Part shown: one piece after another, positions 2,650 to 63,137 of the stretch
Position numbering within the stretch: the first letter of the stretch is position 1
Layout of the letters: each line of letters begins with the position of its first letter
Source of the DNA: Perna viridis
Taxonomy: Eukaryota
Assembly (NCBI GenBank): GCA_037379345.1
Contig: CM074518.1
Coordinates: forward strand, 38,157,586-38,221,585
Direction of reading: 5' to 3'
Length of the DNA stretch: 64,000 bases
Translations under genes and position numbers: made by a program
Notes under the pieces: model-generated
Databases searched by the model: none
What the model saw: the letters and a program-made list of their open reading frames with translations, nothing else
Told to the model about the DNA's origin: nothing

Positions 2650-3790
2650 GTTTGGATTAATTGCTATCCATCACACTGAGAGTTATTCCTCTTGCTATAC
2701 AAAATGGTGTCCAGGAAACAGTCTTTGATATATTTGTACAAAAATTTGGACATGCAGCTGTCCATCTCATTGAGAGTATAAATTCCCCTTGTCTAAAACT
2801 TCTGTTTTCAGGAAACAATCTTAGATATTTGTACATGTTTGCACTGATGTCCAACATACTGAGATTTATTCCCCTTGACTAATACCTTTGTGTCCAGAAA
2901 ACAATTTTCGATATATTTTTACAAAAGTTTGAACATACAGCTGTTTATCTCAATGAGAGTACAAATTCCCCTTGTCTAAAACTTTTGTTTTCAGGAGACA
3001 ATCTCAGATATATGTGTACATGTTTGGACTGATGTCCATCATACTGAGAGTTATCCCCCTTGATTAAAACCTTTGTGTTCAGAAAACAAATTTTGATATA
3101 TTTGCACAAAAGTTTGAACATATAGCCGTCCATCTCACTAAGCGTTATCCCCTTGACTAAAAACTTTGTATTTAGAAGACAATTTTTTTTATGTATTTGC
3201 ACAAAAGTTTGAACATATGTCTGTCCATCTCACTGACAGTTAAGTGTCAGTCACTGTAAGAATCAGGCAGTACGTGAAACATGGTATAAAAAAACTATCA
3301 TTTTGAAAGTGTAATCTGACTACTTGCACCATCAGAATTGAGGAAAACAGACAAGATTTTCCATATCATGCTGCACAATTTAGTTACAATTTCACTGAAA
3401 TGCACTGAAAATGAACATTTCAAGGACAGATAACTCTTTCAAAAACCATATTTTTTTTTAGAACCTATTGAAAATTTTCTGACAAAGCCAGTGATGTAGA
3501 GGTCAAATAATGATCTTTTCAAATAGAGAAAGCAGATCAGTGGGTTTTTGACATGCATGTTTCTGATTTTTCCCATTTTGCCTGATTCTTACAAGTACTG
3601 ACACTTAATCAATTGCCACAATCCTTGGTGTTCAGAAAACAATTATTGATGTGTTTGATGTATTTATACAAAAGTTTGAACTGTGGTCCATCTCACTGAA
3701 GAGTTATTCCCCTTGCCTAAAGTTTTTGTTTTCTGCAAACAATCCTGGGTTTGTAAATGTTTGGACTAACTGCTGTCCATCTCCTTGAGT
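2650..3790. repeat. Degenerate ~92-bp tandem repeat, interrupted by a MITE and overlapping the end of exon A5
   Basis: ccatc(t/a)cactgagagttattcccctt-like core at ~2668, 2762, 2851, 2947, 3036, 3130, 3224 and ~3688. Confidence 0.8.
3240..3608 (+). mobile_element. TTAA-flanked non-autonomous DNA transposon (Kolobok-like MITE), copy 1
   Basis: TTAA-gtgtcagtcactgtaagaatcaggca ... tgcctgattcttacaagtactgacac-TTAA terminal inverted repeats; related copies at 8944 and 58755. Confidence 0.75.
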
Positions 3791-4428
3791 AGAAGCAGAA
3801 ACTGCATATTGAACATTTCTCTGTGTTGTATTAGGTACTACATGTAAGCCATGAGGAACATGCTGTAATGAAGGATCTCGCAAAGAGTTACACTGGATTT
3901 TTTGTTTGTCATAAGCAGTTCTAGTTGATTTGTCATAAAGGTTTCCTTGTTGTCCCTCATAATCAGGCTGTGTATTTTGTAACAGATTTACTCGAGGGGA
4001 GCTAAACTGGCCATGTTGGTGATGTCTATCAGTATGGCCACTCTGTTGTCTTATCTCAGTCACCTGAGCTTGAGGGGCCATTCTAAGTGTTTGTTTACTC
4101 CCATCCTCTTTGTTTTCTGTGTTTTTGTCTGAAGGAAAGTGCCATGAATGGAAGTCTTCATAACAATTGTACAACATCCCAGGCTTACACAAAGCTACAT
4201 TACATTTGAAACACTTTGTGCGGGTGTAAACAAACCACCCTGCTCTCGTTTTTCGCTTCCCACTCTGGCACATGAAACATAATTTTTTGTCGCCTTTGAC
4301 TAAAGTGTGACCAAGATTAGCCCATGGATTGTCAGATGAATTAGTTTTTCCACCGATGAAAAGTTGTACGTTGCTCAATTGGTGGTGTTGCCTGAGTATG
4401 TCAGGAAGTAATGAGGAATCATGGGAGC
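3704..4428 (-). CDS. Gene A alternative terminal exon A5, piggyBac-type cysteine-rich domain (CRD)
   Basis: Acceptor ctctgttttcag|GC, phase 1, in frame with ORF 3704-4378; HTLVKGDKKLCFMC...TRAGWFVYTRTKCFKCNVALC...CYEDFH. Confidence 0.82.
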
Positions 4429-5169
4429 CTGAAAACAGAGAAAGAGTTCGATAACTTGGAATCTGCCAAACATCACTTCTTTACAACTGATACATTTTCA
4501 AATCATGATATAGTGTAGTTTTGAAATAAGGATTATGCCATATTTGAGGAGGAGGCAGATTCCAATAACAGAACTTCTCTGCTCTGTATGGGTAATAAAT
4601 GACAAACACTAATTTTTTTTTTTCAATTTGTTAATGTTTAGTTAAATATATAACAAAATCTTTCCTGTATTCACCTTCAAAAGAATCCATTTTTTCATAC
4701 TATTCAGTAAAGTTAAATAATCATTGGCTACACAGAATCCCCATTAGTGATTTCTATTTTTTTTGCAGACATAACAATAGTGGAAGTGGTGGATCCAGAC
4801 ACTTTGAAAAGGAGTAGTGCTAGGACATTATTAACACTTTTTGCCAATTTTTCAAATAAAACACCCTTCACCCCTGGATCTGCAACTTAGTGACACTGAC
4901 TATAAAAATAATATTTATTATGATCACTACTGCCAGCATTTTTCCAAATTATCTGACCATCTTTAGGTATGTCCAGTGTTCCCAAATAACAACTTTAGGT
5001 AGACTTGGTGTCCATTGATAGACTATAGTCAAAGCAAAGCAATTTTCCTCATCAAAATGACTTTAGTATGAAAGGTTGGGATGTGTACAATGTACATGTA
5101 TCTTATAACAGTAGCAATATGCTTTATGTTTTCTCCAAAAAAAATCTTTTTTTGAGAATATAAACTTCA

Positions 5170-5562
5170 AAATTATTGAAGTCATCACTACAGAAGTTTT
5201 ATGGTCATCATTATGAACTTGTGGATCGTTATGGTGTATCCATCAGCACCATGAAAACTGATTTATTCAACGGGTCATAGTTTTTCTTTCCTCGTTTGTC
5301 TACCCCGGACTTGAATTTTTATGAGCAACTCGGCGGGTGTTTCTAGAAAAGCAGAGGACGCTTACCCTACCGGTGCACCTGGTCCATGCTCCCAGTTTTT
5401 AGTGGAGTCCGAGTTGCTCATTTACTTTTGTAACTTTGTATGTATGATTTTAGTTACTTTATGTTCTTTGTTGTGTATGTCTGTTTTCCATGTCTGGTCT
5501 TTGTCCCTGGATCACATTCTTTTGATTACCGCTAAAACCTTGGTTCCCTTGATTACTCTTTC
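5170..5562 (+). mobile_element. 3' fragment of a Penelope-like retroelement
   Basis: Encodes KSSLQKFYGHHYELVDRYGVSI followed by a shared 3' region; near-identical copies at ~27535, ~29170 and ~39025. Confidence 0.65.
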
Positions 5563-6308
5563 AATAAGGTTTGGAGAAAACCATAACAAAAGTGGCTTGC
5601 TTAATCATTTTTTTTTATTAAACACGCACATATTGTCAAAAAATACTTGGTGAACTAGAAAAGGCCCTTTAGTACGAAAGGGGTGTCATCCATACATTAA
5701 TACAGTAAAAACCCATACAGTTTGCAAAATATTTTTTTTAAGAAATTGTCCTTTCACATGCGGTCCGCCCTAAAAAAAACCAATGGTGATTTTCAAAAGT
5801 TGGCTGGTAATGCAAAGGTCAAATATAAAACATCTGATTCAGCAGTTTTGTAGATAAATTTCTTTAACTTACCAAACGCACTTTATTTCATTGTTACGTA
5901 CAAACGTTAGCTTTCTGCCTCAAAAATCGGTCATTTGCTTTAAATTTCATTTATAGATGCATTAATGGATACTTTACAAAATGTATGTTCAGTGCCCATA
6001 ATTATTAGTCATAAACTAACCCTCAATTTTTGGCCTTATCTTCATAATGTAGTGAGCCCATAAGAAATCATGATTTACATTTACATTCATCAAATACATA
6101 TACATGTTATTACTGTGTTATCACACCAAAACCAAGTGAATTTAAAACACAGCAATGCAAATAACATCCCCACACCATTTTGCATATTATTCCACATGTT
6201 TTTTAGTAGTAAACATAGAAAGGTAATTTATGCACTACATTTAATAACTATTGGAACATTTGTATGTCAGACTGATGCGATTGTCTAATCTAAGCAATAG
6301 TAACATCC

Positions 6309-6904
6309 TCACTTCTTGTTTGTATATGACCACACAATATCAGATTTGACAGAATCTTTTATCATTTGATGATACTTGTCAAAACAGCCCCTTAATCCAC
6401 TACACAAGGGCACATCACATACATCACAGTGATAATAGGACTTAATGTACCATCCACAACTGGTCTTATTTCCGTTGCTCCTACAGAATGCACAGGCCTT
6501 AGCTTTTGAGTCAGTGTTGCGTACTAAACAATGAACACTGGTAGGATTACAGGAACCATGAGCTTCAGTGTAAGGAGGGATAAAGCTAATAGAAGGTCCT
6601 GTTACGTTTTGGTCCCAACGAACTATGAGGGGACTTGCAGAGTTTACTATATCGGAAGTTTCACAAGTTTGCTGGATATGTAATTGATCCTGTGCTTTAA
6701 CAAATGGTGTTTTCTCATTTGGTTCATTTTTGTTCCCAGGTTGATATTGTATAACCTGATGATGTTCACAACTATTCCTTTGCATTACCATGGAAACCAA
6801 GTGATTAATTTCCTCTTTGAACTGTTTTCCTGTATTCTGAAGATCATATCCTGGAATATTTGGTTTTTCCAGGGAACCAGTAACTTCCTGTTTATTCTGT
6901 TTCC
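6309..6904 (-). CDS. Gene A alternative terminal exon A4, piggyBac-type CRD
   Basis: Acceptor ggtttattacag|GG, phase 1; HCLVRN...CAFC...KTSCGWYIKSYYHCDVCDVPLC...CFDKYH, then a stop. Confidence 0.83.
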
Positions 6905-8805: not shown

Positions 8806-8943
8806 AACAAATAATCTCTCTGATCAGAAAAAATACAGAAAACTTAAGCAAGATTTTATGACACCAAAACTATTCAATGTCTATTAAAACTTCAAACACT
8901 AACAAATACTCTTCAAGTTAAAAAGATTTCTTAAACATATAAA

Positions 8944-12360: not shown

Positions 12361-13280
12361 TCATAGGAGATATTCTTGTTGATTTGGTGAGAAGGATGGG
12401 TCTGCTGTTTCATCCCCATTCGTTTTATCTTCTTTAATTGGCAAGGTTTCTTTATCTTGAGCTGAATCTGAGTTGGTCTCGTCAAAATTTGGCACATCTA
12501 TATTGGATTCAGCTGAATCCATTGGATCAGGACCATTTTCAGTAGTGTTGACATCCTTAGGATCAACAGTAATGAAGTGTTGTTTCTCAAAGTCTTTCTT
12601 TGCAACTAAAGGATTAGGGATTGTTATGTCCTCAGTTATTATGCTAGGGGGTGGTGATACTTTATGAGCTACAAGACTGTTGTGGGTTTCATTCGGAGTA
12701 ACCAGATTAGGCGGCATTACACTCGGAGCTACCAGGCTGGGAGGTGTTATATTTTGGTCAGGATCTAACATACCCCCGTAAGCCATAAGTTGATCCGAGA
12801 TTGACTGTGAAAGCATGCTGGTAAATTCTTCATATTTCGGAGTGTAACTTGTCAAGCTTTGCTTGGGGCTATAACCTTCCTCAGTTTTAACATTTTTCCT
12901 AGATTTCTTTGGGGCCTGTGAAGCTGTCGCTTCTTTCAGGGTTTTCAACAACATTTTAGGAGACAAATCAGGCTGTTCCATTCTCAACTCATGGTAGCGA
13001 AGAAAACAATCCTTCTTCCCTTTACACAAACAAACATCACAAGCCTCACACTTATAATATGACTTGATAGCCCACCCAGATTTTGTTTTAAGACGAAGTA
13101 TGTTACAATAAGCACAAGCCCTTTTATGGCCAGTAATATGGACCAGTTTGTGCCCAGGCATGAATGCTATTTCCTGATCATTAGGGTCTTCAGAGGACAC
13201 CTCTTCCTTCCACCCAGGGTATTTCTTAGCTTTAACACAGGCTGGCATGGGCTTAGTTTTAATCACTGGCTTGATAGGTG
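12361..13280 (-). CDS. Gene A alternative terminal exon A3, piggyBac-type CRD plus an acidic/Pro-rich tail
   Basis: Acceptor ctttatactttcag|CA, phase 1; HKLVHITGHKRACAYC...KTKSGWAIKSYYKCEACDVCLC...CFLRYH. Confidence 0.85.
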
Positions 13281-14943: not shown

Positions 14944-15446
14944 TTAAAATGGAAATTTCCCAATTGATCTTCTATCGTCCATTTTCATGTACCCATAGTC
15001 CGAGAAAGAGTTTCTAATGCCTTTATCAATGGCAACAACACACTCCCTCCACATCTGAGGGTAAAGAGAATTATTCCCTACAGGATAATATGCAAACACT
15101 ATTTTTTCAATTTTATCTAGTTTGGCCCCATCTAAAGGTAGCTTGCCTCTGCGACCAAAACAGTTGTGATCCTTCAATTCTGAATCAGTAAAGAAATGCC
15201 TAACCAGTCTCCAAGCAAAGTTCTGTCGTGACACCGCAGAAGCCAAAATTTCTTCAATAGTCTCCTGCTCTTCCACAGGCACACATTCAGGCCTGTTTTC
15301 AAAGTTAATAACTTTGATAGGAATAGCATCTTCAATATAAGGAAAAGTCTCCATATTATCACCTCCCATGACAGTTTTTCCATCTTTAGCAGCCACAACC
15401 TTGAACTTGGGATGATCATGTTTGTTTTGCCTGTTACCATGGTAAC
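14944..15446 (-). CDS. Gene A alternative terminal exon A2, BEN domain
   Basis: Acceptor tgctgttgcag|GT, phase 1; SRQNFAWRLVRHFFTDSELKDHNCFGRRGKLPLDGAKLDKIEKIVFAYYP...WRECVVAIDKGIRN is a typical BEN domain. Confidence 0.87.
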
Positions 15447-16674
15447 CTGCAACAGCACACAACAAAATGATCATCCTTAGTTTACAAGCTGAGTTTGTTT
15501 CAGGTACAAATGTATTTCACAAAATCAATGTCTTTTTTTTTCAGTATTTTTTACAATTAAGAACATGGCTATTAAGGCATGTTATTTAAGATTTTTGGAT
15601 ATTTATGTAAATCTTGAGCAAGTATCAAATTTCCATGACATATGAACAGTAGCCAACACACTGAACCAGATTAGACACACCACCATGAACTATGACTAAA
15701 TAGAACAGACATTCTATGCCAGAAACCCAAACTCAACCTCAGCATTGATACTTTGCAACACCCTCCCCCTTTTATTTTTCTCTACAGAATTACCCAGTGT
15801 TTGGTACGTGTATAATTCTAAGTCAAAAATCTGTGCTAATCCATTTCCAACATGCAAATTTTCTTTATTTACTCAGAAGACATGACATCAAGAACTCTTT
15901 ATATATTACACCTACCTGCATGAATATTGCTAAATATACATGTGTGTCACATCAGCTAGCATCAAAGTCACATTTGTTAATTTGGATATTAATTACCAGT
16001 ATATTGAAGATTGAGAAAACAAATGCTTTTCATTAGGCTTAGAAAATACTTAAGGCTGTGGTAGTAAATCACACATCAAAATTAATTTGAAAGCTTTTTA
16101 TTGATTCGGTTGTAAGTTTAAAAATTAGTTATGAGGTATTTTTAGTTGTTACCATGGGAAAACAATGACCCACATACTTATTTATAGCAATATTCGTCTG
16201 TTCTTCAGCATACGTCTGCATTCAATGTTGATTCTTTTTTTTTTATTTTCAACAAACAGGAAGTTATCTACATATACCATGTACTTACACATCATCAAAG
16301 CATTCCTTTTTAAAAATAAGGACAGTTAGAATCTTTCTGTATTGATTCATTCATCTCCGCAAGGCACAAAATTTGAATCTTAAGTTACTCAAAAATCACC
16401 CACTTCATTTTTACGGCAAAACAATCTATACTTCTTTTTTCAAAGATGTTTAATAATAACAGAAATGTTTATACAAGAACATAGAAAGTAATTTGCATAA
16501 TTTTGAATATACATGTATATTACATACGGTTCAGCTTTTTTCTGTATGAACAAAATATACAAGTACAACATTACAACATGTATATGTTAATAATATAACA
16601 TCCACTACAGGCTCTTAGTGATAGATAAATGTACATGTACATGTATGTGTCTTTTCTGATTCCAAAAGTGTAGT

Positions 16675-17285
16675 TTAATTGGAATCTTCCTGAACTTTAG
16701 ACTTAGCCTTAACTACAGGTCTCCTGAGGCTTTCATTTATTTTTGTAATTGCATTTAATTTCCACAATTCTATATTTTTCAGTTCTGGATGGAAGTATGT
16801 GACATATCTCTTGATGTAACCTTTCCTAGCAGGATCAAGGGCATGTTTGTGCTTTGGACCCCCACCAAAATATGAATAATGAATTCTCTGCCCATCTGGA
16901 CCATATAACTCTGGAAATAACCTCTCAGTAATTTTTTTGGCAAAGTTACCCGAGCCTATGCTCTGTTTATGTATTTCAACTAGGTCAGGAAGAGATATGT
17001 AAGATTCTTGAGGAATGTCTTTGAAAGGATCCCCCTTAGTTTCACTTAGCAACTTGTGATAGTCGACAACATTCCATCTTGTCCTCTCGCTAGTATTGCG
17101 TGTTTGCTGATCATGAAATCTCTCTATATTTTTCACACGTAAATAATTTATTCCAACATTTTCAGAGCTCTCCATATCATTATCATAGGGAACTTGTTCC
17201 ACATGATCATTTTCAGTATTTTGTACAACAACATAATCAGCTCTTTTTTCTATTATTCCAGTGCTTTGCAAGTCACCAATGTCAT
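16675..17285 (-). CDS. Gene A alternative terminal exon A1, BEN domain
   Basis: Acceptor atgtcatttcag|AT, phase 1; GNFAKKITERLFPELYG...ALDPARKGYIKRYVTYFHP...WKLNAITKINESLRR. Confidence 0.82.
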
Positions 17286-19942
17286 CTGAAATGACATAAA
17301 AAGCTGCTTTCAGAGAATTTTCATGAGGCCATTTGTAAACAAAATAAAATGTTTGACAGATTATGTGTCAGTGCTTTGGAATTTCAGTTTTCTTCTATAG
17401 ATTTCATTTTTTTTATTTACGGGAAAATTCATAATCGCTGATTTCTGTTTTCAAGCTAAACTGTCATGTGACCTGTCAAAAATTTCACAAGTCTTGGGCA
17501 CTTAGTTTAAATGATTTCCTCCGGGAATTACAATTCTGCACTTGCAGATGAACACAATTTTTCTGCAAACGAAAGTCTAATAAATGACAGTGATTAGGAT
17601 TAGAATTCAGAAAATGGGCCATTTTAATGATCTTCAGAATTCCAATGGGCCAATCTTTGAAAAAGCATTTCATTTCAGTGGGACATTTTCAGATGGAATG
17701 TGATCAATGATGCATGGACACCTCTAATCCCAATCACTGCAAGTGACAAAAAAATAGACGAAAAGAAAAGCACTGCATCTTCTTATTTGTCACTAAACAA
17801 TGACAGCAACTTGCAAAGCACTGTACTTCATGGTGTTTTGGTAGATAACTTCCTGTAGTTAAAATTGGCAAAAAAATGTTAATATCCTGAGCGTTTATCT
17901 TCCAACAAACCAATCTATGATTTGATCTTTACCAGACTGTTGAGAGTTAGAAGACAGAGCTTATTCCATCAACATTTTAGCTAAGTGTGGTTCATATAAT
18001 ATACATGTATATAGCAAAACTGTTTCATTAAAAAAAAGAACTTTTTCACTCCTATTGTCAAATGAAATAAGATATAAAATATATACAGATTTTTTTACAT
18101 ATCTTTCAGTGAAAATTTCAATAGTAAGTTGAATTTAATGAAACAGCCTTTCTTAAAATGACACTAATGTGATATACATTGCTATGACATGGTACAATGT
18201 TTATTTCTATTCTGCTCTTTGACTTTATCTTAAAATAAAATTTTCTACTTAAAATTTATTTCTCATTATAACATACCACAAACTATTTTTTGAGGTTTTT
18301 TTTTTCACTTTCAATCACCTGCCACAATTCACTGAATATAATGGCCTCAGCAAACGAGACCATTGGGTTTCAAAACATGGTACAAGATTTCAAATATCAA
18401 AATTACATCAATAAAGATAAGGGGAGACAAACTGGTCTCTACTAGAGGTGAACCTTATTTTGCATTATTTTTTGGGAAGGTAGTTTCATATTTTTCAAAT
18501 TTGAGCTGAATAGAATAAGTAACATATTATACTAAGTTTATGATCTATAGCAAATCTTGGACATCACTGCCTTTGACCAAGCTTGTAATCAAGGTAAACA
18601 AATACATGAATGTCATAGCAATGTGGAAAATTTCCCTTTCCACTTCCAAAGTGCTCAAAGCAAAAAAAGTTCTGAATTTAAAATTAATTTTAACTTTATT
18701 GGACAACAATTCAAATATATACAATTTTCTACTTAAACAAGTTAAGTTCAAATGTGACATTTACCTTCAGTTCTGAAAAGGGAAATTTATTCTTACACAT
18801 ATTTCAATACAAAGTTCAATTTGCAAGAAAGTATGCATGGACTTTTCAAAATAAAAATCTGCTCAAAAACTTTCTAACAAGATTTGTTCCCCTTATCACA
18901 TTAATCTTGAATTTTACTAAAATTATTATAAAGAAAAAAGTAAATTTTGTTTTTGCATTCAAAAAATGAAAGTCACCCCATGTTCCAAAGTTCAAAGGGG
19001 TGTAACTCACATAAATTCAGTGGACCATAAATTACTGGTAATGTGCACAAAGACTTAGACATGTACCTACAGTTTCATTTGTCAAAATTTAGTCCAGTAG
19101 TTTCTGAGAACCAAACTGGGGAGCAACATAATTCATTTCTAGTGTTTTTTGACAATGCTCTGAACTGAACTTTTTTTAAGTAAAACAAATTCTGACACCA
19201 GTGATATTGTTGGCTTTTCCCCACATCCTTTTTCATTATGAAAATATGCCTCATTCAAGACATTTTTTTAAATCAGAAATTTGGAATAACTGTTCAAAAC
19301 CTTGAGTTTGTAGTTAAAATGATTATCTTCATATAGTATGTCAAGAAAAAGATGTCATAAACATTAAATAAATGTAATTTTGAACAGAAACATCATACAA
19401 GTATCAAACCCTTTGACTACCATTGGGAAATAGTTTATCTTATACGTAGACTATTGGGATAATTTTTTAGCCATTTTTGGACAAATGGTGAAACTTTCAT
19501 CAGGGGCAACATACCTATTTCAGAGCTAATTTAAGGCAACCAATATCACTTGGTATACATGTAGTTGGAAAAAAGCTTTTCAACATAATTTAACAAGATT
19601 TAAAAAAGTAATGCACATAGCAATTTACAGCCCCCAGCAGGTGTAAAAAGAAAATGACAATGGACTAAAACTGTAACCAACAATGACTTATTCAACAATT
19701 TACATGAAGTAAAAAGTGGATCACATAATTTTCCCCCCTAATTGTTCCCTCCCTAAATTTTGAAAAATCCATTTTTCTTCTGTCAGGTTTATTTTATACT
19801 GGAAGTATACACAATCACAGTCACCTTTTCTCTTATGATAAATATCATGAAAGGAAAAAAATAGATAGTGTCACACCCCATATAAAAATAAACTGACATG
19901 TGTAGCGAGGGTAATCAAGGGTAGATAACCATGATAACCTAC

Positions 19943-22765: not shown

Positions 22766-23160
22766 CTGAAAATAAAGGAAGAAAATGGCTTGATTAAACA
22801 TGTCAAATGCTTTAAACACCACCAATTACTGTTGTTGCACCAGCCATCAAAATCAGCTTTGTTGTAAAATTCTTCTATGATCCATTTATTATATGTAATA
22901 CTGTCTCAACTCAGTTTTTGAAGATAACCTACATGTAGTGTCTACAGACACTGCCACCTATGACATCAGTGCTACATGTGTACTATAAAACAAAATATTT
23001 TTAACCATTTCCGAAAGAAGAGAAGAATGTGCAATTTAGTACAAGATTCAGATATGAAAAATTTTTGACATTTATTTAATGATCTTGAGTCTATGCTTTA
23101 ATTTTCAGCAGGTGTGTGCCAAAGGCATTTTAAACTACTAGTTCCCATGAACATTTTTAC

Positions 23161-23289
23161 CTTAGTAGTTACATTTCCAGTCTTAATTAAGGCATCACAT
23201 AACATCTGAGATCTCCACATCTGAGCTAACTGTCCAAGTAAGGAACTCGAGTGGATCTGGTTCATATAAACTTTTTGATACTGATTCAT
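23161..23289 (-). CDS. Gene A first coding exon, BTB/POZ N-terminus
   Basis: MNQYQKVYMNQIHSSSLLGQLAQMWRSQMLCDALIKTGNVTTK; acceptor 7 nt before the ATG (exon starts at 23296); donor AAG|GTAAAA, phase 0. Confidence 0.92.
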
Positions 23290-46529: not shown

Positions 46530-46655
46530 ATGAATTATCAGAAAGTTTATATGAACCAGATTCACTCGAGTTCGTTACTATGTCAGCTAGCTCAGATGTG
46601 GAGAAGTCAATTAGTATGTGATGCTTACATCAGGACTGGAAATGTTACTACAAAG
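46530..46655 (+). CDS. Gene B first coding exon, BTB/POZ N-terminus
   Basis: MNYQKVYMNQIHSSSLLCQLAQMWRSQLVCDAYIRTGNVTTK; acceptor ttctttcag| at 46504; donor AAG|GTAAAA, phase 0. Confidence 0.92.
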
Positions 46656-55952: not shown

Positions 55953-56251
55953 ACTTTCAGAGTTACGTGGAATGGGCCAAACGTACTTCAGCCAAAAAGC
56001 GTCGCCGTACCAGCCGAAAACCAGCACCTACCAAGGATACTGCTGTTTCTTACATTCTTGACAATAAGGACAGCCTAAATCCACAGTGTAGAATATGCAA
56101 TGTTTTTCTGACATCTATTGAGGATTTGAAAGCTCATCAACGGGATCAGCACCAGGAATATACATTTTTCTGCAAGTTATGTGGAAAAGGATTTAAAACT
56201 TGGAATGGGCATGCCGGTCATATGGAAAGACACAAGAGAGGGGAGATGTAA
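55953..56251 (+). CDS. Gene B alternative terminal exon B1: basic NLS-like stretch and two C2H2 zinc fingers
   Basis: Acceptor tctgctttcag|AC, phase 1; CRICNVFLTSIEDLKAHQRDQH and CKLCGKGFKTWNGHAGHMERH, then a stop. Confidence 0.85.
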
Positions 56252-57970: not shown

Positions 57971-58119
57971 CCAATCTTACTCCATATCAGAGACGCAACT
58001 TGTCGACTGAAATGCTTAATGAACGCAGGAGACGAAAAAGGAGCGAAGTCAACCGGCGGTACTATTTAAAACGAAAGATGATGCGACAGAGAAGAATGTT
58101 GAAGAAAGATAACATCTAG
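57971..58119 (+). CDS. Gene B alternative terminal exon B2, short Arg/Lys-rich basic helix (not in the ORF track)
   Basis: Acceptor ttttcttttcag|CC, phase 1; ANLTPYQRRNLSTEMLNERRRRKRSEVNRRYYLKRKMMRQRRMLKKDNI*; AATAAA at 58189. Confidence 0.65.
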
Positions 58120-58754
58120 AATAGCGTCGGCATCACGAAGACAAAAATACAAACTACATTGAAAGAGTGACAAATCGTTTGAAGAAAGAATAAATCCATC
58201 GTGTCTTTTTTCTTTACATAACCAGATAGTTGCATTGTGAAGATGTAGTATCCTACATATATGTTGACGCACACAAGCTAATGTAGATAAAATAGTACAC
58301 TTTTGACCGTATTCTACTTAATCTTCCAAATATGCATGTAAATCTTTAAATATTTTTAAGACAAGCTTTATATATTTGTTTACTCTGTTACCTTCAACGT
58401 CTACGGTGTAATTAAAGTGGAATGAGACAGTCTGAAGACACCTTTGTTATTTAAGCAGTAGTGATATCTGCATTATATTTGTGATTTCTAGTAACTTAAC
58501 ATGTTTTGTAAGGGGCTCCACAACAAATACTAGTATATCATAGACAGTTTGTTTCTAGTTGTAATTGTAAACATGAAACTAAGTTAACCTGGAGGAAAGG
58601 GGATGCATGGTGGTAAAGTGTGAAATTGAGTTTATGTACAAGCGTACACCATTGCAAAAAAATATTACCTAAACATCGCTTAACAGTAGAATTTTGGAAC
58701 GTATTTTTGATAAAAAATAAAATGCATTTGATCAACTGAAACTTGCGCGGTCTG

Positions 58755-59108
58755 TTAAAGTGTAAGTGTTTGTAAGAATCAGGCAAAATGGAAAAAAAAA
58801 CATTCATGTCAAACCCCCGCCGTTCTAACAATGAAATATCACACAAGGATACTTTCTCTATTTGAAAAGGCCATTATTTGATCTCTGCATCACTGGCTTT
58901 GCTCAGAAATTTTTCGGTAGAATGTTAAAAAAAATGAGGTTTTGTGAGAGATACCTGCCGTTTAAAATGTTCATTTTCAGTGCATTTCAATGAAATTGTA
59001 ACTCAGTGGGCCAGCATGATACGGTGCAAATAGTCAAATTACACTATCAAATTGATGGGTTTTTTTATACCATGTTTCACCTGATTCTTACGGGGGCTGA
59101 TACTTTAA
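58755..59108 (-). mobile_element. Kolobok-like TTAA MITE, copy 3
   Basis: TTAA-AGTGTAAG...gtaagaatcagg / cctgattcttac...gctgatact-TTAA; the interior matches 3240-3608 in reverse. Confidence 0.75.
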
Positions 59109-59400
59109 TGGTCAATTAGTATAATATTGTCATTACTTACTCTGAAGAAGCGTCTCGCGTTACAGGGGCTGATACTTCATTGGTCTGTTAGTATAATATT
59201 GTCATTGCTTACTCCTAAGGAGCGTCTCGCGTTACAGGGGCTGATATTTTATTGGTCTGTTATTATAATATTGTCATTGCTTACTCCCAAGGAGCGTCTC
59301 GCGTTTCTGGGGCTGATACTTCATAGGGCTGTTAGTATAATATTGTTATTGCTTACTCCTAAGGAGCGTCTCGCGGACGACAGTTTTTGTTGGTCTGTAA
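59093..59400. repeat. 72-bp tandem repeat (~4 copies) that includes the MITE terminus
   Basis: gcgtctcgcg at 59150, 59222, 59294 and 59366; the unit includes ggggctgatactt from the MITE end. Confidence 0.85.
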
Positions 59401-59893
59401 AATATTTCGATGTAGTTGCGTTATTGTTTCATAGTTACCTATTATTACTTTTATATAAACGGAAAGTATTTTTGAAAGAGGAATTGGTCGAAGCAGAGCA
59501 TGTTGAACGAATGACTGATAGTTGACTGCTGATACTGTACGTATTGAATATATTTCCTCCCCAGAAGATTGTTTGAGTACTATATGGTTGTAAATTACTG
59601 CTGAGTTGACGTGTAGCATTATATAGCTGACAAAGGTTTGGTACATCGGAAGCCTCCAATCAAGTCTTGTAATACATGATGAGTTTGTTTTCACCACCGC
59701 AGATCGATATACATGTCCACTTTAAGTACCAGTCCACGTAAAATTCAGACACTGCCAATGGCAAAGTGATTCATGATGTGGAAAAACCCACCAAACAAAT
59801 AATGTTTTTTCAGTCAACATATGCTATAATTTCACCTAACGATAAACATTTCTGTAGTTAAGTCTGCACTTTTTAGAGAATCATACATTTTTT

Positions 59894-59924
<31 letters not shown>

Positions 59925-60089
59925 GGTTTGACGTGCATGAAGCACCTTCTGTCTGATTTTTAGGAAGACTGATACTTGATTTGAAGTAAGTGGATTGTTG
60001 TTTGAAGATAATGGTCTTTGGTTTCGTTGTTGTCTGTAATTGACTGCATTGCAAACGATCGGCTATTCAATTATATTTGTCCTTTTCAG

Positions 60090-60394
60090 GGTGGGGTCCC
60101 GTTGCTGTGTGGCATAGTTCTGATGGTGTACATTGGAATAGCAACAGTTCTGGATATCAAGTTCAATATATGTCGAAAGCCCAACCAGGATCGCATAATT
60201 TGATTCCTCTAACCTCATCTAGTAACAAACCGTGTGCTTTGTGTAAAAAGAATAACATTCGAACTGCTACTGGGCTACCAACAAAAACTTATTACAAATG
60301 TGACACGTGCGATGTGTGCCTCTGTAGACCACAAGTTCGTGATTGTTTCGTACAATATCACGACGAAATGTTCAAACACGGCAAAATGATTTGA
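60090..60394 (+). CDS. Gene B alternative terminal exon B3, piggyBac-type CRD
   Basis: Acceptor gtccttttcag|GG, phase 1; HNLIP...CALC...RTATGLPTKTYYKCDTCDVCLC...CFVQYH; AATAAA at 60430. Confidence 0.85.
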
Positions 60395-60649
60395 TATGTT
60401 TCTTGTGCAAGACCTACATCTCCCTTAGTAATAAAGTTAGTTATAAATCTCAACGACTATTTCCTGTAAGTCAAGAGGTCGTTTAATGTGACCCACTTGG
60501 TGTTTCTATGTTACCCTTTCATTAACCGGATAAAAACTTGTAGCTTGTTTCAGTGGTTGTTTCCCTAAATGTGACGTCTTTGTTTTCTTCTGTGATAATA
60601 GCTCATACCATTCTAAATATGGTTAATTTGGTCTTCATTGTCCTTTCAG

Positions 60650-61005
60650 GAATCTTTCCAAGGGAAGAATTAAAAAAGGAAGAACCCAATCATACAGATT
60701 CGTGTACGAGGAATACAGTTCCTCATTCACAAGAGAACAGGCGATTAGAACCTACCCTCGATTTAATACCACTTCATAGACTCGTACACAATCAAGGTGG
60801 TCGGGCTTTGACTTGTCTGTATTGTAAACTTACGGGGTGTAAGACCGACAGGGGCTATTCAGTCCGATCGTATTATCGATGTAGAGCTTGCGATGTTGCG
60901 TTGTGTAGCAGCGGCTCTAGAAATTGTTATCAGTTATTTCATCAATATCTAAAACGGACTCGTAGTCCAAATCTGAAATGGGCCGACTTCCAGAATAACA
61001 CATGA
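60650..61005 (+). CDS. Gene B alternative terminal exon B4, piggyBac-type CRD
   Basis: Acceptor ttgtcctttcag|GA, phase 1; HRLVHN...CLYC...KTDRGYSVRSYYRCRACDVALC...CYQLFH. Confidence 0.85.
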
Positions 61006-61290
61006 TTAAGTTTTCACCATTTGCGAATAGCGGTTTCTCCATGAGTAATTCGGTATATCCTCTGTTTTTGTTTGTTTGAAAGTAGCTCGGGGAGAGTGCG
61101 AGACTAATTACTAGTACCCGGATGTTGTTTCCGAAGTGTAACATTTAACTGCTATATGCGTCTATTACAAGTTTTTTATGATAGTTTCCAGTTCGTTAGT
61201 ACCGATTCATTTTGAAAGCGATAGAATATTGTATGGTTGGTCTAAAAATGTATGAAATTCCGAGTTGATTTCTATCGTTTATCCTTTCAG

Positions 61291-61607
61291 AGGCCTCCGA
61301 CACGAGTCTATGTTTTACAAACCAACACGTGTTTGTCCGTGATGACACTGGTAGCAACAAGGCCTGTCTGATGTGTTCAGTTTTTGGCAACAAAACTAAA
61401 TGTGGAGAAGCTAGGAAGACGTATTATAAATGTACAGCTTGTAACGTTTTCTTGTGTAAAGGTGATTCGAACTGCTTCAGAAATTTCCATCTTCTGATGG
61501 GAGAAACCGCCGTTACGTTGCATGGAAGTCGTAGAGAATTGCGGCAAACATTAGCTTCAAAATATGATGAATGGTGCAGTAAAACTTATAAAAACCCCAC
61601 CGAATGA
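61291..61607 (+). CDS. Gene B alternative terminal exon B5, piggyBac-type CRD
   Basis: Acceptor ttatcctttcag|AG, phase 1; HVFVR...CLMC...KTKCGEARKTYYKCTACNVFLC...CFRNFH; AATAAA at 61742. Confidence 0.83.
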
Positions 61608-62204
61608 CAATATAATATCTTGGATGCCTGTCATTGTATTCTCAATGATCGAGAAAATAGTATTATTGAAGTTGTTACGAATTTCTGATAATATTTTTTC
61701 AATTGACTCTTGTTGAACGCATCTTTAAAAGTATATAGTTGAATAAAACGGAATCTATCAGAATTTTAAATTGTTGTAACTTGAATCGTTTGGAATAATC
61801 CAGTCAGCCCGTTCGAATTTCATCTCAATTATCTTCGCTTCCACTGGTTGACTTCAAATTTATGTGGATTTATATAGATGGAAGTGAATTTGATTGCTGT
61901 TCGATATCAACTACCTGTTTCATGGTACTTTCCTATTTTACTGTATGGAACGAGATATGGGGAGAGGGTATATCTAGCACGACAACGCGTGCAATTTCAT
62001 GTACATGTTTAACTTGCCCCTTTACTGGTTTCGATATATATATGTATGTTACGCTTCTTTCTGCTACGTGTGTATTGTGATGATAGTATTATATCAAAGC
62101 TATTCCTAAAATGTTTGCATTATCTTATATGGATTCAGTGGACCATTTCATTTTATCCAGGAATTATTTGTTTACCGAATTCTGAATTTCATTATTTCTT
62201 TCAG

Positions 62205-62416
62205 TTGACCCAATTCTCAACATTTATATACTCGTTACGTCGCTATACAGATACTGTATGTGCTGCTGTTGGCTTTAAAACCAATGATAGGAGGTCAAAA
62301 AGTATTATTAATGCCAGATGTGAACGTGCATGTACTTCTGTTTTGCACTGTTTCATGAGTTTCTCGGTAGCGAAGCAGTTGCCTTTCGTATCCATTTTGC
62401 TAGTGTAGGGGAATGA
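62205..62416 (+). pseudogene. Decayed CRD terminal exon (pseudo-exon)
   Basis: Acceptor tatttctttcag|TT, phase 1; reads VDPILNIYILVTSLYRYCMCCCWL*...EVKKYY*CQM*TCMYFCFALFHEFLG, i.e. CRD remnants with stops. Confidence 0.55.
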
Positions 62417-62814
62417 ATCACTTAAATTGTACCATAAGTGCTATACTCCCAAAGTAAATTTAGATTGAATTTTTTGGGGGTTTAACTTGAATCAGTTAAG
62501 AATAAGGAGACAAAAAAATACCACTTTGATTCTGGTCAAATGCTTATCCTGTGTCAAATATCTATTAGAGATCTAACTTCAAAGCTGTATTAAGTTAGTA
62601 TAGTGTCCATACTTGCACTAACTGTTCAGCGTTCAACATGTGCGGTCGTATCAAAGTGCGCCCCGCAAAGCATTTAATAGTTTAAGTAGATTTGAGTCTT
62701 TGAAGTTGTTTCGAGTTCGTAGTATCGATTCATTTTGAAAGCGATAGAATATTGTATGGTTTGGGCTTAAAATGTGTGAAATTCCAAGTTTATTTCTATC
62801 GTTTATCCTTTCAG

Positions 62815-63137
62815 AGGTCTCCGACAATAGAGGTAGTCTATTTTTTACAAACCAACACGTGTTTGTCCGTGACGACACTGGTAGCAACAAGGCCTGTCTG
62901 ATGTGTTCAGTTTTTGGCAATAAAACTAAATGTGGAGATGCTAGGAAGACGTATTATAAATGTACAGCTTGTAACGTTTTCTTGTGTAAAGGTGATTCGA
63001 ACTGCTTCAGAAATTTCCATCTTCTGATGGGAGAAACCGCTGTTACGATGCATGGAAGTCGTAGAGAGTTGCGGCAAACATTAGCATCAAAATACAATGA
63101 ATGGTGCAGTAAAACTACTAAAAATCCCACCGAATGA
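62815..63137 (+). CDS. Gene B alternative terminal exon B6, near-identical duplicate of B5
   Basis: Same acceptor ttatcctttcag|AG, phase 1; the peptide differs from B5 at only a few residues; AATAAA at 63276. Confidence 0.83.

What the first reader, a model, noticed from the sequence alone, without database searches (positions are those of the whole stretch)
3704..63137. piggyBac-transposase-type cysteine-rich domains apparently domesticated as interchangeable transcription-factor cassettes
Seen: seven intact exons (A3, A4, A5, B3-B6) share H-x(9-12)-CxxC-x(n)-(K/R)TxxG-x4-(S/T)-x3-CxxCxVxLC-x(5-7)-C(F/Y)xx(Y/F)H. No DDD transposase core or TIRs were seen next to them. Known: this pattern matches the C-terminal CRD of piggyBac/PGBD4-like transposases, which in Trichoplusia ni piggyBac binds terminal-repeat DNA. 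Inference: one captured CRD exon was amplified and diversified in both arrays, as the shared TxxG insert suggests. The resulting BTB-CRD proteins could be novel transcription factors or insulator proteins, or repressors aimed at transposon ends, by analogy with KRAB-transposase fusions.
Basis: partly seen in the sequence, partly recalled or inferred. Interest (0 to 1): 0.88.

Follow-up and report, generated by a model that had tools for sequence, protein, structure and literature searches.

The report
BTB genes with piggyBac-finger exon arrays
Two neighbouring mussel-type regulator genes each carry a long row of alternative last exons that encode a zinc finger borrowed from piggyBac transposons, kept under strong selection across bivalves and probably giving one protein scaffold dozens of different DNA-binding heads.

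Summary
The window is from a mytilid-like bivalve and holds two head-to-head BTB genes: A on the minus strand, B on the plus strand. All seven motif hits lie in open exons on the strand of their gene. Six match Pfam PF13842, the piggyBac C-terminal finger, and four of those exceed the curated cut-off. With flanks, the locus holds at least 37 intact cassettes (8 in A, 29 in B) and one dead copy. It contains 16 of the genome's 18 best PF13842 hits. No transposase core lies in the window.

- **Splicing:** 34 of 36 cassettes have a strong splice acceptor in the phase of the constant exon's donor. Transcriptome-like contigs from four studies break at the predicted acceptors of B3 and B4.
- **Selection:** orthologous cassettes in other bivalves give dN/dS of 0.05-0.12.
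- **Fold:** the AlphaFold model best matches the DNA-binding CRD of piggyBat (Z 6.8), not the T. ni piggyBac fold.
- **Origin:** one tree branch (support 98) separates 88 BTB-linked fingers from 22 transposase fingers.
- **Conservation:** BTB+PF13842 isoforms are annotated in mussels, oysters and scallops.

I found no paper describing this. DNA binding is inferred, not shown. Earlier scan notes covered this same window only.

The parts
23158..23289 (-). Gene A, first coding exon (N-terminal start of the BTB domain)
   Evidence: tblastn with Mytilus isoforms, aa 1-44, 93% identity
21599..22768 (-). Gene A, constant exon 2: rest of the BTB domain plus a long low-complexity linker
   Evidence: PF00651 BTB, E 1.5e-10; 70-73% identity to Mytilus LOC134685596, LOC127705183 and LOC143082833
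19943..20219 (-). Gene A, constant exon 3. It ends ...TTCAAAG|GTAGG, i.e. a phase-1 donor
   Evidence: tblastn at 70-74% identity; sequence read
16678..17367 (-). Array A cassette of another type: BEN domain
   Evidence: PF10523, 27.5 bits, above the cut-off
14947..15516 (-). Array A cassette of another type: BEN domain, just under the cut-off
   Evidence: PF10523, 22.8 bits against a cut-off of 23.2
12361..13280 (-). CRD cassette A3: acceptor TTTCAG| before 13280, CRD core 12979-13164, a conserved 209-aa tail, then the stop
   Evidence: Ortholog L039 is 70% identical over 306 aa with dN/dS 0.05, and its CRD stretch is identical in protein. No Pfam hit on its own.
6309..6904 (-). CRD cassette A4: acceptor TTATTACAG| before 6904, phase 1, CRD core 6357-6545
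   Evidence: PF13842, 27.3 bits. Conservation with P0128 starts at ORF residue 14. Acceptor read. dN/dS 0.10 against L040.
3704..4428 (-). CRD cassette A5: acceptor TTTTCAG| before 4428, CRD core 4136-4321, 147-aa tail. It is the most divergent of the seven.
   Evidence: PF13842, 18.6 bits, below the cut-off; 70% identity over 66 aa to Mytilus coruscus P0427
46530..46658 (+). Gene B, first coding exon
   Evidence: tblastn with P0077 and P0064, aa 1-43, 95% identity
47651..48877 (+). Gene B, constant exon 2: BTB domain plus linker
   Evidence: PF00651, E 1.8e-10; 69% identity to Mytilus LOC127705185 and LOC134685593
49389..49740 (+). Gene B, constant exon 3. It ends ...TTTAGAG|GTAGG, i.e. a phase-1 donor
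55955..56248 (+). Array B cassette of another type: two C2H2 fingers
   Evidence: PF13894, PF12874 and PF00096; phase-1 acceptor; ortholog in the same relative position in L037
60090..60394 (+). CRD cassette B3
   Evidence: PF13842, 29.6 bits. Acceptor TCCTTTTCAG|. Contigs in 4 of 4 runs begin at 60088 with 25 non-collinear letters before. dN/dS 0.12 against L037. 86% identical over 58 columns to Mytilus P0064.
60650..61005 (+). CRD cassette B4
   Evidence: PF13842, 23.0 bits. Acceptor TCCTTTCAG|. Contigs in 3 of 4 runs begin at 60648 with 27 non-collinear letters. dN/dS 0.12 against L042.
61291..61607 (+). CRD cassette B5
   Evidence: PF13842, 29.4 bits; acceptor; contigs of two runs start at 61289, overlapping a read-through contig that ends at 61318
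62243..62419 (+). Dead CRD cassette with several stops, a decayed copy of the cassette type that starts at 63973
   Evidence: tblastn remnant, the only broken CRD copy found in 144 kb
62815..63137 (+). CRD cassette B6, a recent tandem duplicate of B5
   Evidence: PF13842, 29.1 bits; 93% aa identity to B5, dS 0.128, dN 0.035
63973..64000 (+). Start of the next CRD cassette, which runs off the window. At least 24 more follow, out to about +100 kb.

Best explanation
The window holds the core of a bivalve locus built like Drosophila lola or mod(mdg4). Two divergently transcribed paralogous BTB genes each have three constant 5' coding exons: the BTB dimerisation domain, a long disordered linker, and an acidic exon that ends in a phase-1 donor. 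Downstream, on the same strand, each has a row of mutually exclusive terminal exons.

Most of these cassettes encode one copy of a roughly 55-residue two-zinc domain (H-C2-C2-C-C-H). There are 8 of them in A and at least 29 in B; seven lie in the window. The domain is homologous to the C-terminal cysteine-rich domain of piggyBat/PGBD4-type piggyBac transposases. It has no transposase core beside it.

The likeliest history is that one transposase CRD was captured as a 3' exon in an ancestor of pteriomorph bivalves. It was then multiplied by tandem exon duplication, before and after the A/B gene duplication.

Likely mechanism: each mRNA joins the constant exons to one cassette. The BTB domain dimerises, so two basic CRDs are presented together, much as a piggyBat transposase dimer presents two CRDs to a palindrome. 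The long loop between the two CxxC knuckles is the major-groove reading loop in piggyBat. Here it has a fixed (K/R)-T/S-x-x-G...T-R scaffold with variable positions around it, which would give each isoform its own DNA target.

Shown here: the gene structure, domain homology, fold, expression-type contigs, conservation and selection.
Inferred: DNA binding, dimeric and palindromic recognition, the direction of capture, and the regulatory role.
For: **Motif and Pfam.** Seven hits, all in ORFs on the gene strand. PF13842 matches 6 of 7.

**Genome scan.** 16 of the 18 best PF13842 hits lie in this locus, and only one lies beside a transposase core. No PF13843 match lies in the window.

**Extended locus.** 37 intact cassettes. 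Zn ligands, G61 and L77 are invariant in 36 aligned copies.

**Splicing.** 34 of 36 cassettes have a strong acceptor in phase 1, matching both constant donors. Phases 0 and 2 give 1 and 3. Contigs of four runs from four studies start at the predicted acceptors of B3 (4 of 4) and B4 (3 of 4), each preceded by 25-27 non-collinear letters. RefSeq isoforms with BTB+PF13842 exist in Mytilus, Magallana, Crassostrea, Saccostrea, Ostrea, Pecten, Mizuhopecten, Argopecten and Ylistrum. Logan contigs of 2-3 kb encode uninterrupted 588-648-aa BTB+CRD proteins, which I read as spliced mRNAs.

**Selection.** dN/dS is 0.12, 0.05, 0.10 and 0.12 for B3, A3, A4 and B4 against orthologs, with dS 1.5-2.8. It is 0.27 for the young pair B5/B6. 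One pseudo-cassette was found against 37 intact ones. Cassette order is conserved in another species.

**Fold.** The AF2 core has pLDDT above 90. The best PDB match is the piggyBat CRD by Foldseek (probability 1.00, rmsd 2.1 A over 60 columns) and by VIA-align (Z 6.8, next best 3.3). A profile search of PDB also finds piggyBat first.

**DNA binding by analogy.** The piggyBat CRD is a site-specific DNA-binding domain that reads a palindrome as a dimer through this loop (PMC11707139). All 36 CRDs are basic: net charge +4 to +13, pI 8.7-10.8.

**Tree.** One branch with SH-aLRT 98 separates 22 transposase CRDs from 88 BTB-linked CRDs. Exon-level orthologs are shared with mussels and oysters.
Against: - **No binding data.** No DNA-binding evidence exists for any member.
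[quoted passage not shown] In Mod(mdg4), isoform-specific C-termini act through protein partners (PMC5666082).
- **Junctions not read.** The splice junctions in this species were not read letter by letter. The non-collinear letters were not shown by the tool, the runs are only guessed to be RNA, and one contig runs unspliced from B3 into B5.
- **Weak Pfam cases.** A3 has no Pfam hit on its own, and A5 and B4 are under the cut-off.
- **Limits of the tree.** It uses 58 columns, is unrooted, and samples transposase CRDs only from relatives of one PGBD4-like element, falling in two sub-clades. Repeated capture from an unsampled lineage, or the reverse direction of transfer, is therefore not excluded.
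- **Taxonomic range.** Range beyond pteriomorph bivalves was not established. The last protein search was uninformative.
Confidence: 0.66

Rival explanations
1. The cassettes are real and selected, but the CRD acts as a protein-, histone- or RNA-binding module rather than a DNA reader. Isoforms would then be recruited by partner proteins, as Mod(mdg4)-67.2 is by Su(Hw).
For: The PiggyMac CRD has the same C1-like fold class. [quoted passage not shown] Mod(mdg4) isoform-specific C-termini mediate protein-protein contacts (PMC5666082). C1 domains are the next-best structural matches.
Against: The PiggyMac CRD is acidic (pI 5.48), whereas all 36 CRDs here are basic (pI 8.7-10.8). The closest structure by a wide margin is the DNA-bound piggyBat CRD, at Z 6.8 against 2.2 for PiggyMac. 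In the profile alignment piggyBat's DNA-contacting Arg (R543) falls on the conserved K/R column, and variability sits around it in the recognition loop. The sister cassettes in the same arrays, C2H2 and BEN, are DNA-binding domain types.
Confidence: 0.2
2. The ORFs are decaying remnants of piggyBac insertions (transposon 3' ends) that happen to lie in the introns and 3' region of BTB genes.
For: The genome holds at least 120 PF13843 matches, most with stops. One CRD copy in the window is dead.
Against: There is no transposase core within hundreds of kb. 37 copies are intact against 1 broken. dN/dS is 0.05-0.12 with saturated dS. 34 of 36 have phase-matched acceptors. All lie on the gene's strand. 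Exon order is conserved between species. BTB+CRD isoforms are annotated in nine genera.
Confidence: 0.01
3. The domain is an old host zinc finger that piggyBac transposases acquired, or both descend from a common host domain. The BTB cassettes would then not be transposon-derived.
For: The tree is unrooted, and the BTB-linked and transposase CRDs are reciprocally separate. The fold is shared with host C1 domains.
Against: According to PMC11707139, PF13842-type CRDs are found at the C-termini of piggyBac transposases and their derivatives (piggyBat, PGBD2-4). One search adds bivalve and gastropod elements and fish proteins. Every named BTB-linked hit here is a bivalve. That distribution favours transfer from transposon to host.
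Confidence: 0.06
4. The CRD ORFs are independent small genes with their own promoters and start codons, not exons of the BTB genes.
For: Automatic gene callers predict stand-alone ORFs of 80-280 aa for many of them. An earlier scan note suggests an internal promoter near 9660-10005. That was not tested.
Against: Those ORF calls begin at arbitrary Met codons inside intron read-through. Conservation starts at the predicted acceptor, not at a Met. Acceptor phase matches the constant donor in 34 of 36. Full-length BTB+CRD isoforms and mRNA-like contigs exist in relatives.
Confidence: 0.04

Closest known systems
Drosophila lola and mod(mdg4) loci (BTB genes with arrays of alternative 3' cassettes)
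   Same: An N-terminal BTB domain in shared 5' exons. Dozens of mutually exclusive terminal exons, each with its own stop and each encoding a small zinc-binding or DNA-binding module. Tandem duplication of cassettes. Several cassette types within one array (here CRD, BEN, C2H2).
   Different: The cassettes here are piggyBat-type CRDs rather than C2H2 (lola) or FLYWCH (mod(mdg4)). The host is a bivalve. TTK-type BTB domains were reported to be absent from Mollusca (PMC11426971), so the BTB is of another subtype and the architecture probably arose independently. All cassettes lie downstream on the gene's own strand, so cis-splicing suffices; trans-splicing, as in the fly loci, is neither needed nor tested.
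piggyBat transposase CRD and the PGBD2/3/4 C-terminal domains (Pfam PF13842)
   Same: Profile match, zinc-ligand order and spacing, and the predicted two-zinc fold (Z 6.8 to 9c0f). The domain is terminal in the protein, basic, and has a long loop between the two CxxC knuckles that reads the major groove in piggyBat.
   Different: No DDD/RNase-H core and no transposon ends. C replaces piggyBat's H at the sixth ligand, giving C6H2. The loop is 6 residues longer than piggyBat's and carries a clade-specific (K/R)(T/S)xxG...T(R/Y) scaffold. The last inter-cysteine spacer is longer (5-10 residues against 3) with a conserved R(N/D)CF. The domain is fused to BTB through splicing.
Host-transposase fusion genes (CSB-PGBD3, SETMAR, KRAB- or SCAN-transposase fusions)
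   Same: A transposase-derived nucleic-acid-binding part is joined to a host effector or interaction domain by splicing and kept by purifying selection.
   Different: Only the small CRD was kept, not a whole transposase. It was then amplified into at least 37 paralogous cassettes in one locus, which those single fusions are not reported to show. The taxon is an invertebrate.
PiggyMac CRD (Paramecium)
   Same: A domesticated piggyBac-family CRD with a C1-like cross-brace fold.
   Different: PiggyMac keeps its catalytic core. Its CRD is acidic and did not bind DNA in vitro. Its structural match to the model here is weak (Z 2.2).

Membership tests
Pfam PF13842 zf-Tnp_2 (piggyBat/PGBD4-type CRD), domain level | Profile HMM match at or above the curated cut-off (24 bits) | tested here: met
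   4 of the 7 window exons score 27.3-29.6 bits, two score 23.0 and 18.6, and A3 has none. In the genome scan 16 cassettes of this locus score 29.4-42.8 bits.
Pfam PF13842 zf-Tnp_2 (piggyBat/PGBD4-type CRD), domain level | Eight zinc ligands in the order H...CxxC...CxxC..x.(C/H)...C....H | tested here: met
   Invariant C48, C51, C70, C73, C78, C85 and H90, and H35 in 34 of 36 copies. The profile aligns to the last 38 residues of piggyBat.
Pfam PF13842 zf-Tnp_2 (piggyBat/PGBD4-type CRD), domain level | piggyBat-type two-zinc cross-brace fold, distinct from the T. ni piggyBac PHD-like CRD | tested here: met
   AF2 model with pLDDT above 90 over residues 40-90. Best PDB match is 9c0f piggyBat: Foldseek probability 1.00 and rmsd 2.1 A; Z 6.8 against 3.3 for the next match. 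This is a prediction, not an experiment.
Pfam PF13842 zf-Tnp_2 (piggyBat/PGBD4-type CRD), domain level | Site-specific DNA binding | not testable with these tools
   Only indirect support: basic charge in all copies and homology to the DNA-bound piggyBat CRD (PMC11707139).
piggyBac transposase or domesticated PGBD protein (whole-protein level) | DDD/RNase-H-like catalytic core (PF13843) N-terminal to the CRD | tested here: not met
   No PF13843 match in the window or the 144-kb locus. None of the ten representative hits scanned, which include most of the longest, has PF13843. The proteins are therefore not PGBD-type transposase derivatives; only the domain is shared.
lola/mod(mdg4)-type BTB locus | BTB domain in constant 5' exons | tested here: met
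   PF00651, E about 1e-10, in both genes; exon map by tblastn.
lola/mod(mdg4)-type BTB locus | Array of alternative terminal exons, each spliced to the same constant donor and each ending in its own stop | tested here: met
   Phase-1 acceptors in 34 of 36. Contig breaks at the acceptors in 3-4 of 4 runs. Up to 37 numbered isoforms per gene in relatives. The junction letters in this species were not seen.
lola/mod(mdg4)-type BTB locus | TTK-type BTB domain (arthropod-specific hexamer-forming subtype) | not tested
   PMC11426971 reports that no TTK motif was found in Mollusca. I did not test the motif here. If that holds, this is an analogue of the fly genes and not a member of their family.
lola/mod(mdg4)-type BTB locus | Trans-splicing of cassettes | not testable with these tools
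   All cassettes lie downstream on the same strand, so cis-splicing is sufficient.
Host-transposase fusion gene | A transposase-derived domain joined to a host domain in one mRNA and kept under purifying selection | tested here: met
   BTB+PF13842 isoforms and mRNA-like contigs; dN/dS 0.05-0.12. The direction of origin is inferred from distribution.

The most novel reading that the evidence does not exclude
A single piggyBat-type CRD captured by a BTB gene in an early pteriomorph bivalve was expanded into a combinatorial set of dozens of sequence-specific DNA readers, at least 37 in this species. They are delivered as dimers by two alternatively spliced genes. This would be a bivalve-specific transcription-factor or insulator repertoire that arose independently of the fly lola and mod(mdg4) system, and a new class of eukaryotic DNA-binding domain family whose recognition code could be read from natural paralog diversity. 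A further possibility is that some cassettes still recognise piggyBac ends and silence them.
Probability: 0.45. Interest if true: 0.85.

Novelty: new variant of a known kind. Interest (0 to 1): 0.72.

Why it matters
Three points follow if the reading holds.

**Convergent gene architecture.** The 'one BTB scaffold, many alternative DNA-binding heads' design, known from Drosophila lola and mod(mdg4), would have arisen independently in molluscs. Here it uses a different module, one derived from a transposon.

**Scale of domain co-option.** I know of no comparable case of a transposase DNA-binding domain co-opted and multiplied inside a single gene. The cases I met in the papers read here are single fusions such as CSB-PGBD3 and SETMAR; this locus has about 37 cassettes under strong constraint.

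**A natural test set for the piggyBat/PGBD4-type CRD.** Its DNA-reading mode was solved only in 2025. Dozens of natural paralogs with a fixed scaffold and variable loop positions are an ideal set for deriving a recognition code. They may also help to ask what human PGBD2-4 bind.

For bivalve biology, these two genes, with several tens of numbered isoforms each in RefSeq annotations of relatives, are candidates for major regulators. They are currently labelled only 'uncharacterized protein'.

Tried and rejected
**Look-ups that failed**
- The look-up of encoding contigs for Mytilus isoforms P0002, P0064 and P0424 found nothing, because only the longest product of a gene is indexed. The Mytilus loci could therefore not be compared at DNA level. 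Anonymous ENA and Logan contigs of other bivalves were used instead.
- The third protein search, over P0064 residues 640-724, collected only 5 candidates and returned the two Mytilus copies. It says nothing about range outside bivalves.
- The ESM Atlas gave only sub-threshold leads of 0.85, from mollusc and arthropod clusters, some with PF13842. These were not used as evidence.

**Spliced junctions not recovered**
- I looked for a spliced junction in Logan contigs L038-L042 and in ORF hits identical to this species' cassettes (P0132, P0232, P0243, P0266). All proved to be genomic contigs or intron read-through ORFs, with no constant exon attached.
- Read laying could not span a constant exon and a CRD cassette within 6 kb. 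No junction was read directly, and the tool did not print the 25-27 loose letters at 60088 and 60648.

**Literature**
- Searches on piggyBac+BTB+CRD, PF13842, BTB+lola+mdg4+mollusc, BTB+PGBD4, host-transposase fusion+BTB, and BTB+piggyBac+oyster found no description of this architecture.
- The large fusion screen in PMC12062965 included both IPR032718 and BTB among its screened domains. Its main text does not mention the BTB-piggyBac-finger pair, and its results table is truncated in the held copy. I cannot say whether the pair is listed there.

**Methods**
- My first automatic acceptor pick for A4 (6562) was wrong. Conservation with P0128 and the sequence place it at 6904. Some other automatic picks, for example the cassette at about -11.5 kb, may also be too far downstream.
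- Paralog-versus-paralog dN/dS was mostly uninformative because dS is saturated.

Full report
**1. What is in the window**

Base composition is 34-35% G+C with no N. The BTB-containing ORF at 21563-22825(-) finds 225 proteins. The best named ones are multi-isoform 'uncharacterized' BTB proteins of Mytilus at 70-73% identity, followed by oysters, scallops, Pinctada and Tegillarca. The window therefore comes from a mytilid-like bivalve. It is G000:C8:38157586-38221585 of a 723-Mb assembly.

tblastn with the Mytilus isoforms maps two paralogous genes, head to head and about 23 kb apart.
- Gene A, minus strand: coding exons at 23289-23158, 22768-21599 and about 20219-19943.
- Gene B, plus strand: coding exons at 46530-46658, 47651-48877 and 49389-49740.

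Both second exons match Pfam BTB with E about 1e-10. Both third exons end in the same way...AAG|GTAGG in A and ...GAG|GTAGG in B. One base of the next codon is left on the exon, so both donors are phase 1.

**2.

All are in stop-free ORFs, three on the minus strand downstream of gene A and four on the plus strand downstream of gene B. The aligned cores share invariant H, CxxC, T, G, CxxC, V, L, C, C and H.

Pfam PF13842 (zf-Tnp_2, 'DDE_Tnp_1-like zinc finger') matches six of the seven. Four exceed the 24-bit gathering score. B4 (23.0) and A5 (18.6) fall below it, and A3 gives no hit by itself. A3 aligns without gaps to the others and has all ligands.

Other cassettes in the same arrays encode BEN domains (16678-17367 and 14947-15516, minus strand) and two C2H2 fingers (55919-56248, plus strand).

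**3. The arrays are much larger than the window shows**

A genome-wide six-frame scan with PF13842 gives 18 matches at E <= 1e-3. Sixteen lie between C8:38139766 and 38257738, which is this locus. One lies 5 Mb away. Only one lies next to a piggyBac catalytic core, on C7.

PF13843, the catalytic core, has 120 matches across the genome, most with stops. None is in the window, and the nearest are about 390 kb and 650 kb away.

I fetched 30 kb to the left and 50 kb to the right and scanned the 144 kb. There are 8 intact CRD ORFs on the minus strand, from window positions 13.1 kb to -17.8 kb. There are 29 on the plus strand, from 60.2 kb to 100.1 kb. Each sits on the strand of its gene, and most end 3-38 residues after the last His. 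Only one broken copy was found, at 62243-62419. That agrees with an earlier scan note.

**4. They are exons of the BTB genes**

I searched each of 36 cassettes for a strong acceptor, defined as a pyrimidine tract plus YAG, between the upstream stop and the first ligand. One exists in phase 1 in 34 cases, in phase 0 in 1 case and in phase 2 in 3 cases. Phase 1 is the phase that both constant donors require. The acceptors of B3, B4, B5 and B6 all read TCCTTT(T)CAG|.

I laid contigs from four runs of four different studies on 58001-64000. Each run holds about 65-95 Mb of contigs, which is transcriptome-sized for a 723-Mb genome. The tool only guesses that they are RNA.
- Contigs begin at 60088 in 4 of 4 runs, with 25 letters before that do not lie on the stretch.
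- Contigs begin at 60648 in 3 of 4 runs, with 27 such letters.
- In two runs contigs start at 61289, overlapping a read-through contig that ends at 61318.

These positions are the AG of the predicted acceptors. The two extra aligned bases are explained by the constant exon also ending in AG. The loose letters themselves were not printed, so the junction was not read directly. One contig also runs unspliced from B3 into B5.

Independent support comes from relatives. RefSeq models join BTB and PF13842 in numbered isoforms (up to X37 among those listed) of Mytilus, Magallana, Crassostrea, Saccostrea, Ostrea, Pecten, Mizuhopecten, Argopecten and Ylistrum. Other isoforms of the same genes end in C2H2 or BEN, and a further paralog in Mytilus (LOC134685251) has HTH_psq endings. 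Logan contigs of 2.1-3.1 kb encode uninterrupted 588-648-aa BTB+PF13842 proteins, which I read as spliced mRNAs.

All searches were run exon by exon.

**5. They are under strong purifying selection and are old**

Orthologous cassettes were recovered as DNA from anonymous bivalve contigs. Nei-Gojobori estimates are as follows.

| Cassette | dN | dS | dN/dS |
|---|---|---|---|
| B3 | 0.20 | 1.65 | 0.12 |
| A3 | 0.15 | 2.8 | 0.05 |
| A4 | 0.16 | 1.54 | 0.10 |
| B4 | 0.23 | 1.99 | 0.12 |

In A3 a stretch of roughly 100 residues that contains the CRD is identical in protein, although the proportion of synonymous differences over the whole exon is 0.73. The recent duplicates B5 and B6 give dS 0.128, dN 0.035 and a ratio of 0.27, on few changes. 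Other paralog pairs are saturated at synonymous sites.

In the 20-kb contig L037 the cassette order is the same as in the window and its right flank: C2H2, B3-type, B4-type, B5-type, then the next type.

In the tree, B3 groups with the Mytilus cassette (86% identity over 58 columns), and that pair groups with oyster cassettes (support 93-94). A4 and three off-window cassettes also pair with specific Mytilus isoforms. Many cassettes therefore predate the mussel-oyster split. Orthologs of both A and B exist in mussels, and multiple paralogous loci exist in scallops and oysters.

**6. What the domain is**

A profile of the seven cores searched against 1.84 billion representatives finds 764 proteins at E <= 1e-3 and 298 at <= 1e-10. 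The top 150 are short single-exon ORF calls or BTB fusions.
- Among the ten hits scanned, which include most of the longest, three carry BTB, one carries C2H2 plus PF13842, and none carries PF13843.
- Every named cluster member is a bivalve: Pinctada, Tegillarca, Ylistrum, Crassostrea, Mytilus or Magallana.

Against PDB sequences the profile's first hit is the extreme C-terminus of the piggyBat transposase, at E 0.033.

AlphaFold2, run on the B3 exon with 36 paralogs as the alignment, gives pLDDT above 90 for residues 40-90. Foldseek ranks piggyBat (9c0f) first, with probability 1.00 and rmsd 2.1 A over 60 columns, although E is only 0.076 for so small a domain. VIA-align gives Z 6.8 over 58 residues. 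The next matches are C1 domains at Z 3.3 or below, and the PiggyMac CRD scores Z 2.2.

The piggyBat paper (PMC11707139) reports four relevant points.
- It binds two zinc ions in cross-brace mode.
- It is a site-specific DNA-binding domain, and the two copies in the transposase dimer together read an imperfect palindrome.
- Recognition is mainly through the long loop after the first strand (R543, E545). PGBD2-4 probably share the fold.

The cited functional precedent (T. ni) is the wrong structural subtype.

**7. How the BTB-linked CRDs differ from transposase CRDs**

I extracted transposase CRDs from the one near-intact element of this genome and from its relatives in bivalves, a gastropod and other sources. 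That element is L009/L011, two overlapping ORFs separated by a single frameshift.
- Transposase CRDs read ...RDCxxC-x13-20-KRxQT(S/T)(F/Y)xCxxCxVxLC-x3-CFxxYHT.
- BTB-linked CRDs have an 18-residue loop with (K/R)(T/S)xxG and ...T(R/Y)xKC.
- BTB-linked CRDs also have a longer last spacer of 5-10 residues, with a conserved R(N/D)CF.

The 'TxxG' feature is thus a clade signature. It is an insertion only relative to piggyBat, whose loop is 6 residues shorter.

In a maximum-likelihood tree of 110 CRDs over 58 columns, one branch with SH-aLRT 98 separates all 22 transposase CRDs from all 88 BTB-linked CRDs. Cassettes of A and B are intermixed, and array B shows a local burst of 9 neighbouring cassettes.

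This fits one capture followed by amplification. Two limits apply: the tree is unrooted, and its transposase CRDs come only from relatives of one PGBD4-like element. The transposon-to-host direction rests on distribution. PF13842-type CRDs sit on piggyBac transposases and their derivatives in several animal groups, while the BTB form was seen only in bivalves.

**8. Likely mechanism**

All 36 aligned CRDs are basic: net charge +4 to +13 over about 55 residues, pI 8.7-10.8. The non-DNA-binding PiggyMac CRD has pI 5.48 (PMC8086355).

Column entropy is zero at the ligands, G61 and L77. It is low at K/R57, T/S58, V64, T66 and R83. It is high (2.3-3.4 bits) at loop positions 52-56, 59-60, 62-63 and 65. 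In the profile alignment piggyBat's DNA-contacting R543 falls on the conserved K/R57 column, and E545 falls just after the six-residue gap, among the variable loop positions (with a 6-residue offset between chain index and paper numbering).

I infer the following. Each isoform carries one CRD. BTB dimerisation presents two of them. The variable loop residues set the DNA target. This is homology-based inference, and no binding was tested.

The main rival is that the CRD binds proteins, histones or RNA, as PiggyMac's CRD or Mod(mdg4) C-termini do. I give that about 0.2.

**9. Comparison with what is known, and novelty**

In architecture this is an analogue of Drosophila lola and mod(mdg4). It is probably not a member of that family, because TTK-type BTB domains were reported absent from Mollusca (PMC11426971). 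The cassettes are also of another kind, and all lie in cis orientation.

At domain level the cassettes are members of PF13842. At protein level they are not PGBD or transposase derivatives, because the catalytic core is absent; this was tested and not met. They fit the concept of host-transposase fusion genes but differ by the roughly 37-fold amplification of the captured domain inside one locus.

Seven literature searches found no description of BTB plus piggyBac-CRD genes. [quoted passage not shown] A 2025 screen of TE-host domain co-occurrence included both domain classes, but its main text does not discuss the pair and its results table is truncated in the held copy.

I rate this a new variant of known kinds. 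It is annotated by machines and undescribed in the papers I could search.

**10. Verdict**

| Claim | Estimated probability |
|---|---|
| Observation | confirmed |
| Selected alternative terminal exons of two BTB genes | about 0.95 |
| Homologous to the piggyBat/PGBD4-type CRD | about 0.9 |
| Single capture from a transposon | about 0.7 |
| Sequence-specific DNA-binding heads of dimeric regulators | about 0.6 |

Interest is 0.72.

Noticed in passing
L001:252-1109(-) and L001:7395-8363(-), about 21.6-29.7 kb left of the window start: Two long ORFs on gene A's strand, downstream of its last CRD cassette, match Pfam DUF3504 (PF12012; 30.4 and 39.7 bits, both over the cut-off). From memory, not checked here, this domain is linked to Crypton tyrosine-recombinase transposons. 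They passed my phase-1 acceptor filter, so they may be further cassettes of gene A carrying a second transposon-derived domain, or they may be separate genes.
   Followed up: partly
L010 (G000:C8:43250000-43259000): BTB exon about 7459-7818(-), CRD exon about 4297-4470(-): A third BTB gene lies 5 Mb away. Its BTB exon is 43-46% identical to those of A and B, and a single CRD exon lies 3 kb downstream. It may be a simple, non-array form of the same fusion.
   Followed up: partly
L009 3592-5354(+) (G000:C7, about 2478091-2479853): The only piggyBac element in this genome with a detectable PF13842 CRD beside its core. It has two overlapping ORFs of 301 and 303 aa separated by one frameshift. An older, decayed copy lies just upstream (C7:2476638-2477840).
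   Followed up: partly
window 12364-12990(-): Cassette A3 carries a 209-residue tail after the CRD that is conserved in another species (70% identity over the whole 306-aa exon, dN/dS 0.05). A5 also has a long tail of 147 aa. These tails may add a second function to those isoforms.
   Followed up: partly
window 58001-58630: Transcriptome-like contigs from all four runs cover this stretch between the C2H2 cassette and B3. An earlier scan note proposes a short basic exon starting just before it, at 57971-58119. I did not determine its frame or acceptor.
   Followed up: no
window 58600-59200 and 59600-60000: Summed contig depth in the four runs is very high: about 770-6600 at 58601-59200 and about 135-1100 at 59601-60000, against single or double digits elsewhere. 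There are many short irregular joints, so these are probably interspersed repeats that are abundant in the runs.
   Followed up: no
window 5315-5650(+), 27623-27961(+); L005 6928-7194(+): Near-identical ORF-like stretches (…SAGVSRKAEDAYPTGA…ESELLIYFC…) recur at three or more places, which indicates an interspersed repeat family inside both arrays and in the intergenic region.
   Followed up: no
window 1076-1499(-): A tandem repeat translates as reiterated ISQSPVQIGCALQTTC-like units in two frames. It is probably a satellite or minisatellite, not coding.
   Followed up: no
window 36-350(-) and L003:7239-7571(-): Two more phase-1 cassettes of array A have no Pfam hit at E <= 0.1.
   Followed up: partly
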